A stretch of DNA of 64,000 nucleotides from Podarcis melisellensis (GCA_964234715.1 OZ174282.1); one strand, 5' to 3'. Counted from the first letter of the stretch, positions 7,401-13,400 are shown. Notes: generated by a model not told the origin, from the letters alone. Translations and numbers: made by a program.

Positions 7401-10400
7401 TTCCAGAAATCACTTTTCTGACAAGGATGGTGGATGATTAATTGGGTGATTCATAACAGGAAACAGCCCATCTCAGCAATTGGGTGTTTTATTTATTGAA
7501 TTGTATAGATAATATTTATGTTCCACACATACAGTATTGCTGCTCCCAGGACAGCTGCTAATACTTTTTTCTTTTAAAAAAATGGGCTGGAAGGTAGTGC
7601 AGTTGCGTTAAAACAAACAGATGTTTCTATTGGCTGGTTCCACTTGGCAAACTAGCAGGCATGTTTTTGGAAAACACAGGTAGTCCAGTATTCCTTGCAG
7701 CACACTACAGCAATCTAGTGAGTGCACAGCTAATTATGTTCAGGCTTTCTCTGTCCAGGAAGTGTCCCATTTGGTACCCTCAATTTGCCACACTGGCTGC
7801 ATATCATAGTGTAAAAATGATAAATACGCCATCCACTTTTGTGGGTTTATTTGCGAAGTACATTTGTTCTGTATGTAATCAAGAGTGTTACAGGGGACAT
7901 CTCTGAAATATTTCCTCCCATTTCTCGCTCCCCCAAGTTATGGCCTGCTTATTTCAGAGTTGGAAAAAGCCATACCTCCCATGGATCTTTTCCTGAGCAT
8001 CATGCATGTTTTCTGACTACATACCACTTAAACTTGCTATTGCTATATTGATTGTACTCCAGTGACATCTTATGAATAATCAGGGTTGGCTGGCAAATTA
8101 GTGGCTCACCTTTAAAAAATATGTTATTTTGATTTCTTTCTCCCCTATGCAGCTTCGTCTGAACAGCATCAAGAAACTCTCTACCATTGCTCTGGCCCTG
8201 GGAGTTGAGAGGACGCGCAGTGAGCTTTTGCCTTTTCTCACAGGTAATGAAAAGACCAGGAACTCTGATTTTAGGGAATAAGAATTGATTCTAGAGGCTG
8301 TGATGCATGTGAGTTTGAATTGCAGCTTGGGCGCTACCCCAAATCCCTTTCCCAAAGCTGTGGTGATTTCCTTTTTAGGGCTGCAGTATATACGTGATCA
8401 GCGGCACTTGAGACTCTTGCAGAATTTTAAATCCTTTTCAAAGCTTTGCTGATGAATGCAGCCTTGCCAAAAGAAAGGGACTGCGTCCTTGTTGAATTTA
8501 GTTGGTTCAAGATTGTGCTGACAGGATTGTGCCAAGGTGTACTTATTTCCTGCACTGGAGGGCAATAGTTCACATCTTCAAATTCTCACATCATGTTAGC
8601 TTCCAGATTCTGTGCTCTTGACAATGCAGATTTTAGTCTTGATTTGCTTTAATTGCTTTTTTTCTCTCCCCACAGACACTATTTATGATGAGGATGAAGT
8701 GCTACTTGCTCTGGCGGAACAGCTGGGAACCTTCACAGCTCTGGTTGGGGGCCCTGAATATGTCCATTGCTTGCTGGTAAGCCCAGTGAATGACTGGGGA
8801 AGAGTGCTCTCCACAGTGGGAGAATGTGAAATTTTCTAACACCTCTGTTCCTTTCAAACTTTGGTGGGCGAAGTGTTGGTCATTAGCAGATTTGAGGGTG
8901 GTCCTAGGTTGGATTCTGAATTATACTGCCCACTAGTAAAAAGGATATGTTGTAAAATGGTAGCATGCATCCACCCTTTGCCTGCTTCTAAAGCAGTGTT
9001 TCCCAACCGGTGTTCCGCGGCACACTTGTGTGCCGCGAGGTGTTGCCTGGTGTGCCGCGAGGTGTTGCCTGGAGGGAGGCGGGCGAGTCCAAAAAAGGTT
9101 GGGAAACACTGTAACACACGCCAGCCGGGGTCTGCCTCCGCGTTGCATCAGCTTCCTCGCTCTCGGCGCTCTGCTTGCCAGCCTGGTGGCCTCTGCCCCG
9201 CCCCGAGACTGGAAGGGAGGGGCGGGGCTTCCACTGCGGCTGCGTCTCTGGCTCTTTCGACTCATTCCTCCTCCGAGTGGGCTTGAAAGAGCGGCCGATG
9301 GATGAATCGGCCGGCGACCCTGAAGCCTTGTGCAAAGTAGAGGAGGCGGAGAAGTGACGGCAGGGAGCTTAGGCGCCGCATCCGGCTCATTGCGGGAAGT
9401 CAAGATGGCGGCGGGTAAGTGTGGGAAGCAGCTTTTTCCCTCCGCCGCCCCCCTCTCACCGGGAATAAAGGGGGCCCCGCTGGGGGGTGACGTTGTATAA
9501 CGCAGAGTTCTTATTTTGGGAAGGTTTGAGGGGTCGGACTAAGCGGGTTGGGGGCTGGTCTGGGCTTCCGCTCCCTCCCCTCCCCACGGAGTGTACCTGC
9601 GGTGCAAGGAGGCGCTCTGAGCCACTGCTCTGGGAAAGGAAGGAGGGTGAGGCGGCCTGGCCAAGTGCAGGGGAGACCCATAGTGGGGAGCAGGGGGAGG
9701 AGGAGGCACCGAGGAATGGAGGCGGGGGAGACTCCCTCGCTTTGCAGAAACTGCAAAAAACGAGGCAGGAATTGGGTTTGTTTTTGTAGCTCAGGACGTG
9801 CTTCGCTTCTGGTGTGCCTAAGGCGGCCGCCCCAATTATCCCCTAGCCCGTCTTTCCAGGTGCTGCCCCCCCTCCACAAAGGGCCATAGAACTGTAGAGT
9901 TGGCAGGGGTCCCAAGGGTCATCTAGTCTTAAGTTTCTCTTTCAAAAAGGAAACATGGGTTAAAGCGGCGGCGCCGCCCCCCACTCACTTTCCTGCTCTG
10001 GCTTCCCTAACAGTTTTCCGAGTTGCGTCACTGGATCCAGCCCCCTTTTCCACAGGTGACACGGGGCTGGAGGGAGGGAAAGAGGGCTTTACGTCGCGCA
10101 CAAAGGCAGCCTCCTAGAAGCGCTCTGGGCCGGCGCCGTTTCGCCGAAGGCGCCGGAGGACTCCCACCCTCAGCTCCTTCAGAAAGGACTGGAGCGGAAT
10201 AGCCCTTTCTCTTCTTCCCCAACCCTTGTCGTTGGAGGAGTCCCTCAGTCCCTCGCTTTGCTGCCTCCTCCCCCCCCCCACCCCCAAAGCTTGGAGGTTC
10301 CCCGGCAAGGGGGAGGGGAAAAAATTGAAACTTACACTTTCGTGCGTCCCTCCCGGCGTGACGCTGCGCGCTGACGTCACGGGGCTGTAATGGTGGTGTG

Positions 10401-13400
10401 CCTCGATATTTTTTTCATCAAACAAGTGTGCCTTTGCCCAAAAAAGGTTGGGAAACACTGTTCTAAAGTGCAGCTTAATGGTATCGGAATGCCTTTCCCA
10501 TTTGCTTCCAACAATGTTGCCCCAAAACAACAGATACTGTAACCTTGTATTTGGACTATTTGCACGCTTGACATCCAGTTTTACACACCAATACAGGTCG
10601 CACCCCTTGCTTTCCAAATCTTCTTCCTTCTCTTCATACTTCTTTGAAAACAGAATTTCTGTATTTCCATAAATCGCACAGTGTTAGGGGACATTGGGCA
10701 CAGAAACACGTGTGTATACCTTTAAGAAGTTTCTGGGATTAATTGGCTGCAGCTGGCCGTTGCTATAAAGGAAAAAAGCTGAGTTTTGTAGTTTGCCTGC
10801 AGGAATAACACCCAACAGAGTTTCTGCTTATTGTTTAGTAATAAAGTCTTTGTTTTAGTTTGGGTTTTTACACCTATGTTTCCTGGAGTCACTCTGTCCT
10901 CTCCCACCGGCTGGAACTCCCCCTCCAATACACAGGCCAAAGATTGTAACAGGGGCATGCTGTATTAGAAGACTGTATTCTTCCTTGAGGGATTTGCTGA
11001 TTTAATATAAAAAATATTTATAAATTGTATTTTGGCCCTAGGCAGTGTACAAAAACAAAATATCTAAACTTAGTTTCTCGTGTGTGTGTGTACATACACA
11101 CATACTGCCTTGGGGGACCCTTGCTAGATTATCAGTAAAGTAGATTATGAATGGAGCAGAACATGCCTAGAAACCTGGAGAAGTGGAATTAACTCACATA
11201 CTAAAAGCTATTAAAAACCCATGTGGAACAGAAAGCTGAGATGGAGCCAGTCTTACATTCCCTTGGGAGGAAGTTGCTTAGACAGGATGTCACATCTTTA
11301 GATGATTTATCTATCTTTCAGAACATCACATTTTTCTTCAAATTTCCCCCCTCCATTTCTCTTATTACTTACTGTAATAAGAAACCCGAAAAAGGTCAGG
11401 CAGTAACACATTTGGTGCTACAACACCCTTTGTTATGCTAAGCTGCAGACATTGCATTTAATGTGTAATGTATCTTCCCTCTTTGTGCTGCAGCCTCCGC
11501 TTGAGAGCCTTGCTACTGTTGAGGAGACAGTGGTCCGGGACAAAGCGGTGGAGTCTCTGCGAGCCATCTCCCATGAACACTCTCCATCTGACCTTGAGGC
11601 CCACTTTGTTCCCCTCGTGAAGCGCCTGGCAGGAGGTGACTGGTTCACCTCCCGCACCTCTGCTTGTGGCCTCTTCAGTGTCTGTTACCCTCGAGTCTCC
11701 AGTTCGGTCAAAGCTGAGCTCCGACAGTAAGTGAGATGCTTTACATTAAGGTCTGGGCCTGTTGGTTGGGTCACCTATGTCAAAGGGTGAGAGACACCAA
11801 TTCAGATGGCTCTGTATTTCCCAGCTAACAGTCCTTATTCCTTTCCTGCAGGTACTTCCGGAACTTGTGCTCAGATGACACTCCGATGGTCAGGCGAGCG
11901 GCAGCCTCTAAACTGGGTGAATTCGCAAAGGTCTTGGAGCTGGAACATGTCAAGAGCGAGATCATCCCCATGTTCTCTAACTTGGCCTCTGATGAGCAGG
12001 TCTGTGTGATTGCATATTGATTTCTGGGAGAGGGCTGGGGCAGGCTAGATCACCTGTAACCCACCTCACGTCTCTCATACAGGACTCTGTGCGTTTGTTA
12101 GCTGTGGAGGCCTGTGTTAATATTGCACAGCTCCTGCCCCAGGAGGACCTGGAATCGTTGGTGATGCCAACACTACGGCAAGCAGCAGAGGACAAATCTT
12201 GGCGGGTCCGTTACATGGTGGCTGACAAGTTCACGGAGGTTAGTACGAATCCATGTATGCCTCAGCAGTGCTTGTGTGGTATTCGTTTTATTTGAAAGAT
12301 TTATACCCAGCCTTTTGATCAAATCATCTGAAACTCAGACTTTGTGTGTGTATACACACATTATTTCTTTTTTAGAAAAACCTCTCAATTCAACTTATTA
12401 AAAAAACGTTGCAAAAACTCACTTCGTGCTCTTATTCCTCTGGTCAGAAGCAGTGTCCTTTCCTCTTATTTCTACATTTCCTGGGTATTTCTCAGTTGGA
12501 GCACAATTCTTTTTGGCAGGGATCTATTTGGGATCATCATATATTTTCCCTTTCTTGCCTACAGCTCCAGAAAGCTGTCGGTCCAGAAATCACAAAAACC
12601 GACTTGGTCCCGGCATTCCAGAACCTGATGAAAGACTGTGAAGCTGAAGTGCGGGCTGCTGCCTCCCACAAAGTCAAAGGTCAGTTGCAGTCACAATGCC
12701 TGTGGTGGTGGCTTCTTCTGTCCAATTGTTTGGAATCAAAGGGAACCCAGATTCTCTGAGGGCTGCTCCTGCCCCATCCGTGTCCTCACTTATCTGAAAT
12801 CCTGTAAACAGCTGTTTGTGTTTTGTGCTACAAATACTGCTATTTCTGTTCTAGAAAAGTTAAATTTGACACTCAAATAATTCAAATATTGCAAATCAGT
12901 TTTTTGTTGTATATACCTTCTGTTCCCTCTACGTGGCTTTATTCTGAGCTTGTTAGAGGAACAATGTAAGTGATAGAAAATGAATGCCTATAAGAGGTAA
13001 AATGTTTAAAGGGAAAGTGAAATGGCTCTAACATTCAGAGCACTCATGGTCTGTGTGCTGGAGCCATTTAAAAATGGCACCTACTATTTTTCAAGCCTTA
13101 TTTACATAGCTATGATAGCTGGACACATGCTTAGAATGTAACTGATATACAGTAAAATACAAGCCTTGCTTCCTGTGATTTGGTGTGGCTGTAGTACAGA
13201 TACAAGACTCCACACATAGGTCAGGAAAAAAAGGTAGCACATGACATAGTTCTATAATGCCGCAACAACTCAACTAACCTTTAAACAGCCAAATGACAGT
13301 CTCTATAGAAACGAGAGACTTGTCTAAATTCAGTTGCAGGAAGATGTGTTTCTGGAGGTCAGTAATTTGTACATTATGGTGGGTTCGGAAGTCTGACAGT

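What the first reader, a model, noticed from the sequence alone, without database searches (positions are those of the whole stretch)
8994..10460. Pack-type hAT transposon carrying apparent promoter and first-exon fragments, inserted in PPP2R1A intron 3
Seen: a 1467-bp unit bounded by perfect 15-bp TIRs and a perfect 8-bp TSD (TTCTAAAG), so it arrived as one transposition event, probably recently. It has no transposase-like ORF. About 1.27 kb of the interior is GC/CpG-rich against an AT-richer intron, and reads like a patchwork of housekeeping-gene 5' ends: GC boxes; GGAAGTCAAGATGGCGGCGG|GTAAGT (ETS/YY1-type motif + ATG + consensus donor, 9395-9420); two minus-strand donors (GTGAGT at 9983-9988, GTAAGT at 10330-10335), the latter just downstream of a CRE TGACGTCA (10372-10379); and a clipped CR1/SINE tail (9885-9928). 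Known: plant Pack-MULEs preferentially capture GC-rich 5' gene fragments, and such elements are much less characterised in vertebrates. Inference: a lizard hAT family that collects promoter/exon-1 pieces from several loci and disperses portable CpG islands.
Basis: partly seen in the sequence, partly recalled or inferred. Interest (0 to 1): 0.82.

Follow-up and report, generated by a model that had tools for sequence, protein, structure and literature searches.

The report
Three-ended hAT transposon carrying GC-rich cargo
A young cut-and-paste (hAT) transposon without its own enzyme sits in an intron of the lizard PPP2R1A gene, is still absent from that site in another individual, and is one of about ten copies of a compound element carrying about 0.8 kb of promoter-like DNA whose source gene could not be identified; the kind is known, and this scan has met it several times in this genome.

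Summary
Perfect 15-nt TIRs and a perfect 8-nt TSD (TTCTAAAG) bound a 1,467-nt unit in PPP2R1A intron 3. It has no protein domain, and its interior is CpG-island-like. A second individual of the same species label carries the empty site with a single TTCTAAAG, so the unit arrived in one transposition and is polymorphic.

Three things change the reading:
- **Third TIR.** There is a third TIR at 9097-9111, so 8994-9111 is a complete 118-nt MITE-like unit and the element is a compound.
- **Not a one-off.** The 9112-9932 segment has about 8-12 times the k-mer depth of the flanks. A second lizard species holds it with the same junctions.
- **Layered copy number.** Only 9112-9927 is subfamily-specific cargo. 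9933-10188 stands at about 50-120x and 10240-10460 at thousands. The CRE and both minus-strand "donors" lie in the transposon body or arm, not in captured promoters.

The cargo reads best as one contiguous gene 5' end: promoter, a short exon 1 (ATG plus donor), and intron 1 cut inside a SINE. No donor locus could be searched, and RNA of the related species shows no reads on it.

The scan has already reported sister "Pack-hAT" elements elsewhere in this genome. I class this as a new member of a known kind.

The parts
8986..8993 (.). Left copy of the 8-nt target site duplication TTCTAAAG
   Evidence: It fits the NYYTARRN target pattern listed for Charlie/SPIN-like Anolis hAT families (PMC3014272). 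The empty-site contig in X4 keeps one copy (joint 8985->10461, 8 letters fit both sides).
8994..9111 (+). Complete 118-nt MITE-like unit forming the left arm. Left TIR 8994-9008, inner right-type TIR 9097-9111, and a 22-nt tandem duplication 9025-9046/9047-9068 private to this subfamily.
   Evidence: I4: 15-nt arms, 100% complementary; D4; D3: the 24-nt right terminus is repeated exactly at 9089-9112 and 10438-10461.; the left 65 nt stand at about 7,000x flank depth; an X5 contig covering 9010-9111 has depth 198, the same as the cargo; loose ends behind 9057 show that commoner forms lack the duplication.
9112..9884 (+). Low-copy CpG-island-like cargo. Paired GC boxes at 9195-9228, the YY1-type motif plus ATG plus GTAAGT donor at 9395-9420, then G-rich (positive GC skew) sequence that reads like intron 1.
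   Evidence: GC and CpG o/e. (GC skew +0.17 to +0.37 over 9200-9800). (motif counts against shuffles); unitig depth is 443-481 in X1 (flank 36), 81-103 in X4 (flank 9.8) and 198 in X5; RNA run X23 gives about 0 reads.
9885..9928 (+). First 44 nt of a roughly 150-nt SINE-like repeat, cut on its 3' side. It marks the right breakpoint of the captured piece.
   Evidence: matches at 43732-43773, 40633-40672 and 1938-1971. (five window copies start at the same base as 9885 and run on for about 150 nt). (depth about 61,000 in X1; loose ends behind 9928 continue into the canonical repeat).
9929..10239 (-). Body shared with a roughly 10-fold commoner sister family in which the inner TIR abuts 9933 directly. 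It has a recombination breakpoint at 10187/10188 and contains the minus-strand AAG|GTGAGT at 9983-9988.
   Evidence: joint 9111->9933 (X4 depth 820, X5 1,635); X1 loose end GGTTGGGAAACACTG before 9933; depth 1,900-4,500 in X1; loose ends at 10187/10188; a 612-nt X1 contig leaves the window sequence at 10188.
10240..10460 (-). High-copy right arm of the hAT family. It includes the CRE TGACGTCA (10372-10379), the minus-strand GTAAGT (10330-10335), and the outer right TIR 10446-10460.
   Evidence: depth 48,000-326,000 in X1. The canonical family diverges before 10388 (117 RNA reads, agreement 0.97); other subfamilies diverge at 10304-10328. for the TIR.
10461..10468 (.). Right copy of the target site duplication TTCTAAAG
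8676..8777 (+). PPP2R1A exon 3 (ends ...CTG|GTAAGC, phase 0), 216 nt upstream of the insertion
   Evidence: RNA of organism B covers it (bin 8684-8779, depth 6.3).
11493..11700 (+). PPP2R1A exon 4 (starts cag|CCTCCG, phase 0; the end coordinate is approximate)

Best explanation
The unit is a young, still polymorphic, non-autonomous hAT transposon of the Charlie/SPIN/Buster-like kind. It is one of roughly ten near-identical copies of a compound, three-ended element.

It has three layers:
- **Left arm (8994-9111):** a complete 118-nt MITE-like unit with two perfect TIRs.
- **Cargo (9112-9927):** about 816 nt of low-copy host-like DNA. I read it as one contiguous gene 5' end: a CpG-island promoter, a very short first exon (ATG GCG GCG G, then GTAAGT), and about 470 nt of intron 1 broken off inside a SINE.
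- **Body and right arm (9929-10460):** these end in the second right TIR. Together with the same MITE-like unit they form a roughly ten-fold commoner sister family without cargo.

The cargo begins exactly at the outer edge of the inner TIR. The cargo-bearing form also carries a derived 22-nt duplication. From this I infer the following sequence of events. The transposase cut at the inner TIR of a short-form copy (abortive excision of the 118-nt unit). The break was repaired with filler DNA copied from an ectopic promoter region. The outer pair of ends (8994 and 10460) then mobilised the whole as one transposon, supplied in trans by an autonomous relative.

Shown: the ends, the TSD, the empty site, the copy-number layers, the sister form, and the absence of coding capacity.
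Inferred: the host-gene origin of the cargo, the direction short form to long form, and repair-mediated capture.

There is no evidence that the cargo acts as a promoter at this site. If its donor were spliced to PPP2R1A exon 4, the phases (1 and 0) would not match.
For: - **Ends and TSD:**
- **Empty site in X4:** two contigs skip the element. One gives joint 8985->10461 with 8 letters fitting both sides. The other gives 8993->10486, carrying the flank's own next 18 letters with differences. Their summed depth is 8.8, against flank depth 8.8-9.8.
- **Family membership:** cargo unitigs stand at 443-481 against flank 36.4 in X1, and at 81-103 against 9.8 in X4.
- **Age:** the window copy differs from the unitig consensus only at 9355, 9498 and 9648. 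Two of these are CpG to TpG.
- **Same architecture in organism B:** an 843-nt contig covers 9115-9954 with 4 differences.
- **Sister short form:** joint 9111->9933.
- **The 22-nt duplication** is absent from commoner forms (loose ends behind 9057).
- **The SINE head** is cut at its 3' side.
- **Promoter-like features of the cargo:**
- **No protein domain:**
- **TIR and TSD** resemble hAT-N3_AC, hAT-HT3 and SPIN in Table 1 of PMC3014272.
- **Published parallels:** filler DNA and a compound element (regular element + extraneous DNA + truncated second end) are described for maize Ds (PMC3260210). Gap filling and end bypass are described for animal Pack-TIRs (PMC8277862).
Against: - No parental locus was found or could be searched, so the cargo might be transposon-internal DNA of a family I cannot see.
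- The depth ratios come from summed unitig depths, which the tool warns are not strict copy numbers.
- No other copy was seen with its own TSD.
- No contig spans the 9111/9112 junction. Cargo unitigs start at 9112-9124, so what lies to the left may differ among copies.
- The direction short form to long form rests on parsimony (one duplication).
- The 8 nt after the inner TIR (TAACACAC) do not fit the family's target pattern. That argues against simple end bypass, but it does not prove filler capture.
- RNA of organism B shows about 0 reads over 9164-9835. An expressed housekeeping exon 1 at 90% identity or more was therefore not seen.
Confidence: 0.68

Rival explanations
1. One reading: a Pack-type hAT whose interior is a patchwork of promoter/exon-1 fragments collected from several unlinked genes.
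For: - The interior is a mosaic of segments with different copy numbers, with breakpoints at 9112, 9928-9933, 10187/8 and about 10240-10328.
- GTRAGT, YY1 and CRE motifs exceed shuffles.
- Other notes of this scan report hAT elements in this genome carrying the 5' ends of named genes. I did not check those notes.
Against: - The CRE and the 10330 donor lie in sequence present in thousands of copies. The 9983 donor lies in sequence at about 50-120 copies. These are transposon body or arm, and older than this subfamily.
- GC skew shows just two blocks: G-rich on + over 9200-9800, and C-rich on + (G-rich on the minus strand) over 9800-10400.
- No donor loci were identified.
Confidence: 0.12
2. There was no host capture. 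The whole interior is the internal sequence of a non-autonomous or autonomous hAT lineage (for example the transposon's own promoter, leader and intron), and the subfamilies differ by deletions anchored at the inner TIR.
For: - Every segment is multicopy, and none shows a donor.
- Orphan hAT families with unrelated interiors are common in lizards (PMC3014272).
- Minor forms in which the inner TIR abuts 9898 or 9928 could be a nested deletion series.
Against: - The 3'-cut SINE head sits inside the segment.
- The cargo stands at only about 10 copies, against 50-7,000 for the rest.
- The cargo-bearing form carries a derived 22-nt duplication.
- There is no transposase remnant.
- The strand polarity of the cargo is opposite to that of the body and arm.
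Confidence: 0.15
3. Simple end bypass or macrotransposition: a MITE and a 5'-truncated relative lay about 0.8 kb apart at a promoter, and the transposase used the two outer ends, carrying the DNA between them.
For: - The architecture is a complete unit, then DNA, then a second right end in direct orientation, with one TSD around the whole.
- Macrotransposons are documented for Ac/Ds (PMC9910405, PMC3260210).
Against: - The sister family has the inner TIR abutting 9933 with nothing between, and it is about 10 times commoner. The three-ended frame therefore existed without the cargo.
- The 8 nt after the inner TIR do not look like a TSD of this family.
Confidence: 0.05

Closest known systems
Multicopy Pack-TIRs of animals (Tan et al. 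2021, PMC8277862), e.g. Pack-hAT-N8_XT carrying the CAPSL 5'UTR in Xenopus tropicalis
   Same: It is a non-autonomous hAT with TE ends on both sides and a GC-rich, gene-5'-end-like interior. It was amplified to several copies after capture. Such multicopy cases are reported as rare (4 found in 100 genomes), and they tend to capture high-GC DNA.
   Different: The defining parental copy was not found here and could not be searched. This element keeps a complete inner TIR pair, and the cargo sits exactly at its edge.
Maize Ds elements with filler DNA, and the compound Ds-l4-483 (Du et al. 2011, PMC3260210)
   Same: The order of parts is the same: a regular element with perfect TIRs, then extraneous DNA including a retroelement fragment and transcribed sequence, then a truncated second end with a perfect TIR and the TSD. 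It belongs to the hAT superfamily.
   Different: In Ds-l4-483 the TSD is also repeated after the first element, and the element is single-copy. Here the 8 nt after the inner TIR are unrelated to the TSD, the compound is multicopy and polymorphic, and the second end is not a duplicate of the first beyond 24 nt.
Ac/Ds macrotransposons and alternative transposition (Huang and Dooner 2008, as cited in PMC9910405 and PMC3260210)
   Same: Ends of two separate hAT units in direct orientation move the DNA between them as one transposon, with an 8-nt TSD.
   Different: Those are tens of kilobases long and were observed genetically. Here the frame also exists without the cargo, which points to filler capture rather than plain macrotransposition.
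Charlie/SPIN-like non-autonomous hAT families of Anolis (hAT-N3_AC, hAT-HT3N_AC, SPIN_NA; Novick et al. 2010, PMC3014272)
   Same: The TIR matches CAGTGGTTCCCAACCT at 14 of its 15 positions. The TSD fits NYYTARRN. There are thousands of MITE copies, and subfamilies share ends but differ in the centre.
   Different: The host is different (a wall lizard, according to other notes of this scan). No named family with this exact TIR was seen in that table.
Plant Pack-MULEs
   Same: They show a bias to GC-rich gene 5' ends, and part of the family is multicopy (own knowledge; PMC8277862).
   Different: They belong to a different superfamily (Mutator, 9-11-nt TSD, long TIRs) and a different kingdom.

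Membership tests
hAT superfamily, non-autonomous element | 8-nt target site duplication | tested here: met
   TTCTAAAG lies on both sides. The empty allele keeps a single copy.
hAT superfamily, non-autonomous element | Short TIRs beginning YARNG | tested here: met
   The TIR CAGTGTTTCCCAACC is perfect over 15 nt and imperfect to about 40 nt. The YARNG rule is taken from PMC3014272.
hAT superfamily, non-autonomous element | Mobilised by a hAT transposase (an autonomous partner with a BED/hAT dimerisation domain) | not testable with these tools
   No transposase domain was found in the element or in the larger window ORFs scanned. The rest of the genome could not be searched.
Buster/Charlie-SPIN-like hAT clade | Target preference nnnTAnnn (NYYTARRN / NTCTAGAN) | tested here: met
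   TTCTAAAG fits NYYTARRN. The consensus of RNA-read loose ends behind 10460 starts GTCTAGAA, and the 8 nt between tandem units are CACTAGAT.
Buster/Charlie-SPIN-like hAT clade | Transposase phylogeny | not testable with these tools
   No autonomous copy is available.
Pack-TIR (Tan et al. 2021) | TIR-TE sequence on both sides of an internal non-TE sequence | tested here: met
   The arms 8994-9111 and 10240-10460 belong to a family of thousands of copies. 9112-9884 stands at only about 10 copies and carries a clipped SINE head.
Pack-TIR (Tan et al. 2021) | A parental copy elsewhere, not linked to a TIR TE, at 90% identity or more and 80-120% of the length | not testable with these tools
   No lizard genome is searchable. 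ORF look-ups found nothing. The only hint is a roughly 92% identical contig of single-copy depth over 9471-9821 in X4.
Pack-TIR (Tan et al. 2021) | For multicopy status: several copies with distinct TSDs | tested here: inconclusive
   Depth ratios give about 8-12 copies in two individuals, one of which lacks this insertion. The flanks of other copies were not seen.
hAT macrotransposon / end-bypass product | Two like-oriented ends of separate units bounding host DNA, with one TSD around the whole | tested here: met
hAT macrotransposon / end-bypass product | The bypassed inner end is followed by the progenitor's own TSD and its native flank | tested here: not met
   9112-9119 reads TAACACAC, which does not fit NYYTARRN. 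The same frame also exists with the inner TIR joined directly to 9933.
Functional CpG-island promoter | Length of at least 200 nt, GC of at least 0.5, CpG o/e of at least 0.6 | tested here: met
   9112-9500 has GC 0.645 and o/e 0.79. The whole interior has 0.62 and 0.66.
Functional CpG-island promoter | Transcripts starting there, and an unmethylated state | tested here: inconclusive
   One RNA run of organism B gives about 0 reads over 9164-9835, although PPP2R1A exon 3 is covered. No RNA of organism A was available. Two of the three private changes in this copy are CpG to TpG, which hints at germline methylation.

The most novel reading that the evidence does not exclude
The same cargo-bearing compound element stands in a second lizard species, with identical junctions and a family consensus that differs at about 1 in 840 positions. 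None of this locus's unique intron sequence is recovered from that species at 90% identity or more. If the two species are really that far apart, a non-autonomous, promoter-carrying hAT has passed between species (by horizontal transfer or introgression) together with its cargo-free sister family.

Other notes of this scan report several more hAT elements in this genome with gene 5' ends as cargo. Taken together, this would describe a lineage of hAT elements that repeatedly loads promoter/exon-1/intron-1 modules at an internal TIR edge and spreads them within and between species.
Probability: 0.2. Interest if true: 0.7.

Novelty: new member of a known kind. Interest (0 to 1): 0.4.

Why it matters
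Multicopy gene-fragment-carrying DNA transposons are common in plants but were found only four times in a survey of 100 animal genomes (PMC8277862). A lizard genome with several young, polymorphic families of them would be a natural system for studying how cut-and-paste transposons pick up promoter DNA.

This copy adds a structural clue. The cargo starts exactly at the edge of an internal, intact TIR, and the same three-ended frame exists without cargo. That points to a break made by the transposase at the inner end and repaired with foreign DNA, and this can be tested.

For PPP2R1A itself there is no sign of an effect. The insertion is intronic, absent in another individual, and its putative donor is out of phase with exon 4.

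Tried and rejected
- **Rfam scan of 8500-11000:** only two chance-level miRNA matches. No RNA gene is present.
- **Pfam on eight ORFs of the element:** nothing.
- **Reaching other copies through ORFs of the cargo:** ten exact look-ups were absent from the protein collection. 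One word-based protein search with the 134-aa ORF gave no hit. The collection evidently holds no gene calls on this lizard DNA, so I spent no more protein searches.
- **BLASTN of the element against the rest of the window:** only the SINE piece and the element's own ends matched. There was no similarity to the PPP2R1A promoter.
- **The search of earlier findings by sequence:** blank for the MITE and for the cargo.
- **Two independent insertions at this site:** rejected, because the empty allele lacks the whole 1,467 nt plus one TSD copy.
- **Precise excision in X4 instead of an ancestral empty site:** unlikely, because the junction has no footprint.
- **Assembly artefact for the whole unit:** rejected, because independent runs hold the cargo and its junction to the body.

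Full report
**What is in the sequence**

The stretch 8994-10460 is bounded by the 15-nt inverted repeat CAGTGTTTCCCAACC and by a perfect direct repeat TTCTAAAG at 8986-8993 and 10461-10468. With up to two mismatches the TIR occurs four times in the 64-kb window, against 0.21 expected. Three of the four belong to this element. The ends also pair imperfectly to about 40 nt.

The interior 9112-10385 has GC 0.62 and CpG o/e 0.66. The left flank has 0.43/0.18, the right flank 0.44/0.36, and the whole window 0.46/0.34. None of eight ORFs on either strand reaches a Pfam family threshold, and Rfam finds nothing.

PPP2R1A lies on the + strand. Exon 1 is near 3870-3938, exon 2 near 8150-8240, exon 3 at 8676-8777, and exon 4 starts at 11493. 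The element is therefore in intron 3, 216 nt past the exon 3 donor.

A third TIR, of the right-end type, lies at 9097-9111. So 8994-9111 is by itself a complete 118-nt MITE-like unit with two perfect TIRs. The last 24 nt of that unit are repeated exactly at the outer right end (9089-9112 = 10438-10461).

The unit also holds a 22-nt tandem duplication (9025-9046/9047-9068).

The repeat fragment at 9885-9928 is not a tail. Five other copies in the window begin at the same base and run on for about 150 nt. It is therefore the 5' head of a SINE-like repeat cut on its 3' side. Retroposition does not produce such a fragment, so this is a rearrangement breakpoint.

**Evidence from public reads**

Contigs of two DNA runs labelled organism A (X1, X4), one DNA run of organism B (X5), and raw RNA reads of organism B (X23) were laid on 8300-11150 at 90% identity or more.

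- **Source-like sample.** X1 matches the flanks without a difference and is probably the source or a close relative.
- **Empty site.** X4 differs by about 2.5% in the flank and carries the empty site. One contig joins 8985 to 10461 with 8 letters fitting both sides, which is a single TTCTAAAG. A second contig joins 8993 to the flank's next letters. Their depths sum to 8.8, against flank depth 8.8-9.8. The whole 1,467 nt therefore arrived in one transposition. The insertion is polymorphic, and the junction has no excision footprint.
- **Copy-number layers, X1.** The unique flank stands at 36. Segment 9124-9835 stands at 443-481 (about 12x). Segment 9933-10219 stands at 1,900-4,500 (about 50-120x). 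The SINE piece stands at about 61,000. The left 65 nt and the last 220 nt stand at 48,000-326,000 (thousands of copies).
- **Copy-number layers, X4.** This individual lacks the insertion but gives the same ratios: 81-103 against 9.8.
- **Caveat.** These are summed unitig depths, which the tool warns are not exact copy numbers. The unitigs in question lie wholly inside the segments, though, and two individuals agree.
- **Sister family.** A joint 9111->9933 (X4 depth 820, X5 depth 1,635; in X1 a loose end with the TIR sequence before 9933) shows a sister family about ten-fold commoner. In it the inner TIR abuts the body directly, without 9112-9932.
- **Further breakpoints.** Loose ends at 10187/10188, 10304-10328 and 10388 mark points where other subfamilies diverge.

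**Consequences for the "patchwork of promoters"**

The CRE at 10372-10379 and the minus-strand GTAAGT at 10330-10335 lie in the arm present in thousands of copies. The minus-strand GTGAGT at 9983-9988 lies in the body present in tens of copies. They belong to the transposon, possibly to its own leader, and not to freshly captured genes.

Only 9112-9927 is specific to this subfamily of about ten copies. That piece reads as one contiguous gene 5' end:

- a pair of GC boxes at 9195-9228;
- the YY1-type motif followed by ATG GCG GCG G and GTAAGT at 9395-9420;
- positive GC skew on the + strand from 9200 to 9800, as is usual downstream of a CpG-island start site (own knowledge);
- a SINE head where the piece breaks off.

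Motif counts exceed shuffles: GTRAGT 3 against 0.45, and the YY1 11-mer 1 against 0.00. The motifs were chosen after the fact. The body and arm have the opposite skew, so the interior consists of two blocks of opposite polarity, not many pieces.

**Age and state of this copy**

Over about 830 nt the window copy differs from the family unitig at 9355, 9498 and 9648. At 9355 and 9648 the family has C before G where the window has T. The copy is very young. Its only decay is largely CpG to TpG, which hints at germline methylation rather than a protected CpG island. With only two such changes this is weak evidence.

**Expression**

The RNA run of organism B covers PPP2R1A exon 3 (depth 6.3) and the high-copy arms, but gives about 0 reads over 9164-9835. 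In that tissue and species, neither the element's cargo nor a source exon at 90% identity or more is visibly transcribed. No RNA of organism A was on offer.

The cargo donor is in phase 1 and exon 4 starts in phase 0. A splice between them would not keep the PPP2R1A frame.

**How it most likely arose**

Three observations bear on the origin:
- The three-ended frame exists without cargo and is commoner.
- The cargo-bearing form has a private 22-nt duplication that commoner forms lack (loose ends behind 9057).
- The cargo starts at the exact outer edge of the inner TIR.

I infer that the transposase cut at the inner end of a short-form copy, and that the break was repaired with DNA copied from an ectopic promoter region. 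This is filler DNA or gap filling, as described for Ds (PMC3260210) and for animal Pack-TIRs (PMC8277862). The outer ends then moved the new compound.

Plain end bypass or macrotransposition is less likely. The frame pre-exists, and the 8 nt after the inner TIR (TAACACAC) do not resemble a target duplication of this family.

**Comparison with the known**

TIR and TSD place the element with the Charlie/SPIN-like hATs listed for Anolis. The TIR matches hAT-N3_AC at 14 of its 15 positions, and the TSD fits NYYTARRN (PMC3014272).

Non-autonomous hAT families that share ends and differ in the centre, and that incorporate foreign DNA, are described there. The architecture matches the compound maize element Ds-l4-483.

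Pack-TIR membership needs a parental copy, which I could not look for. The protein-based routes to other copies found nothing.

The scan's own notes list several sister cases in this genome: hAT elements carrying the 5' ends of UBE2G1, AHSA1, DCLK2, ATP6V0A2, SIX5 and others, some multicopy and shared with related species. I did not check those notes. They make the general phenomenon likely and this instance less singular.

**Unexplained**

Organism B holds the long form with the same junctions: an 843-nt contig over 9115-9954 with four differences, three of which are the window copy's private changes. It yields none of the ten unique flank bins at 90% or more.

There are two possible readings. 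Either the introns of the two species are more than 10% apart, in which case the family has moved between them by transfer or introgression. Or B's flank contigs were dropped.

**Verdict**

This is a real, young, polymorphic, multicopy compound hAT carrying promoter-like cargo of unproven origin. It is a new member of a known kind.

Noticed in passing
window 9115-9954 (run X5): A second lizard species holds the cargo-bearing form at about 99.5% identity with identical junctions. None of the unique intron flanks (8300-8971, 10508-10603, 10988-11083) is recovered from it at 90% or more. This may mean horizontal transfer or introgression, or the flank contigs may have been dropped.
   Followed up: partly
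window 9471-9821 (run X4, 349-nt contig): A contig about 92% identical (25 mismatches, 4 gaps) stands at roughly single-copy depth (6.4 against flank 9.8). It could be the donor locus or an old copy of the cargo.
   Followed up: no
window 32766-33728, minus strand: An intact 320-aa single-exon ORF is a rhodopsin-family GPCR (Pfam 7tm_1, E 4.6e-44). It may be a formyl-peptide/chemoattractant-type receptor. That guess rests only on the NPLLY motif and my recollection of such genes near PPP2R1A in mammals.
   Followed up: partly
window 52949-53437, plus strand: This ORF has an Ig V-set / CD22-like first Ig domain (E 3e-9), which looks like a Siglec-like exon. It lies just after the N run at 51972-52140.
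   Followed up: partly
window 31153-31167, minus strand: This is a TIR-like end (CAGCGTTCCCCAACC, 2 mismatches to this family's TIR), probably the end of an older related hAT copy. I did not look for a partner end.
   Followed up: no
window 43620-43775, 40616-40674, 38138-38282, 29868-30036, 61275-61309, 1924-1971: These are copies of the roughly 150-nt SINE-like repeat whose first 44 nt are embedded in the element. Most share the same 5' start.
   Followed up: partly
window 2080-2973, plus strand: A 297-aa ATG ORF lies about 0.9 kb upstream of PPP2R1A exon 1. It has no convincing Pfam match (HrpB_C at E 0.0011, below the cut-off). It may be a chance ORF in GC-rich promoter DNA or a TE remnant.
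   Followed up: partly
window 10277-10328 (run X23): RNA reads from other copies of the right arm replace 50 nt with a 17-nt variant. This is a subfamily indel, not a splice.
   Followed up: no
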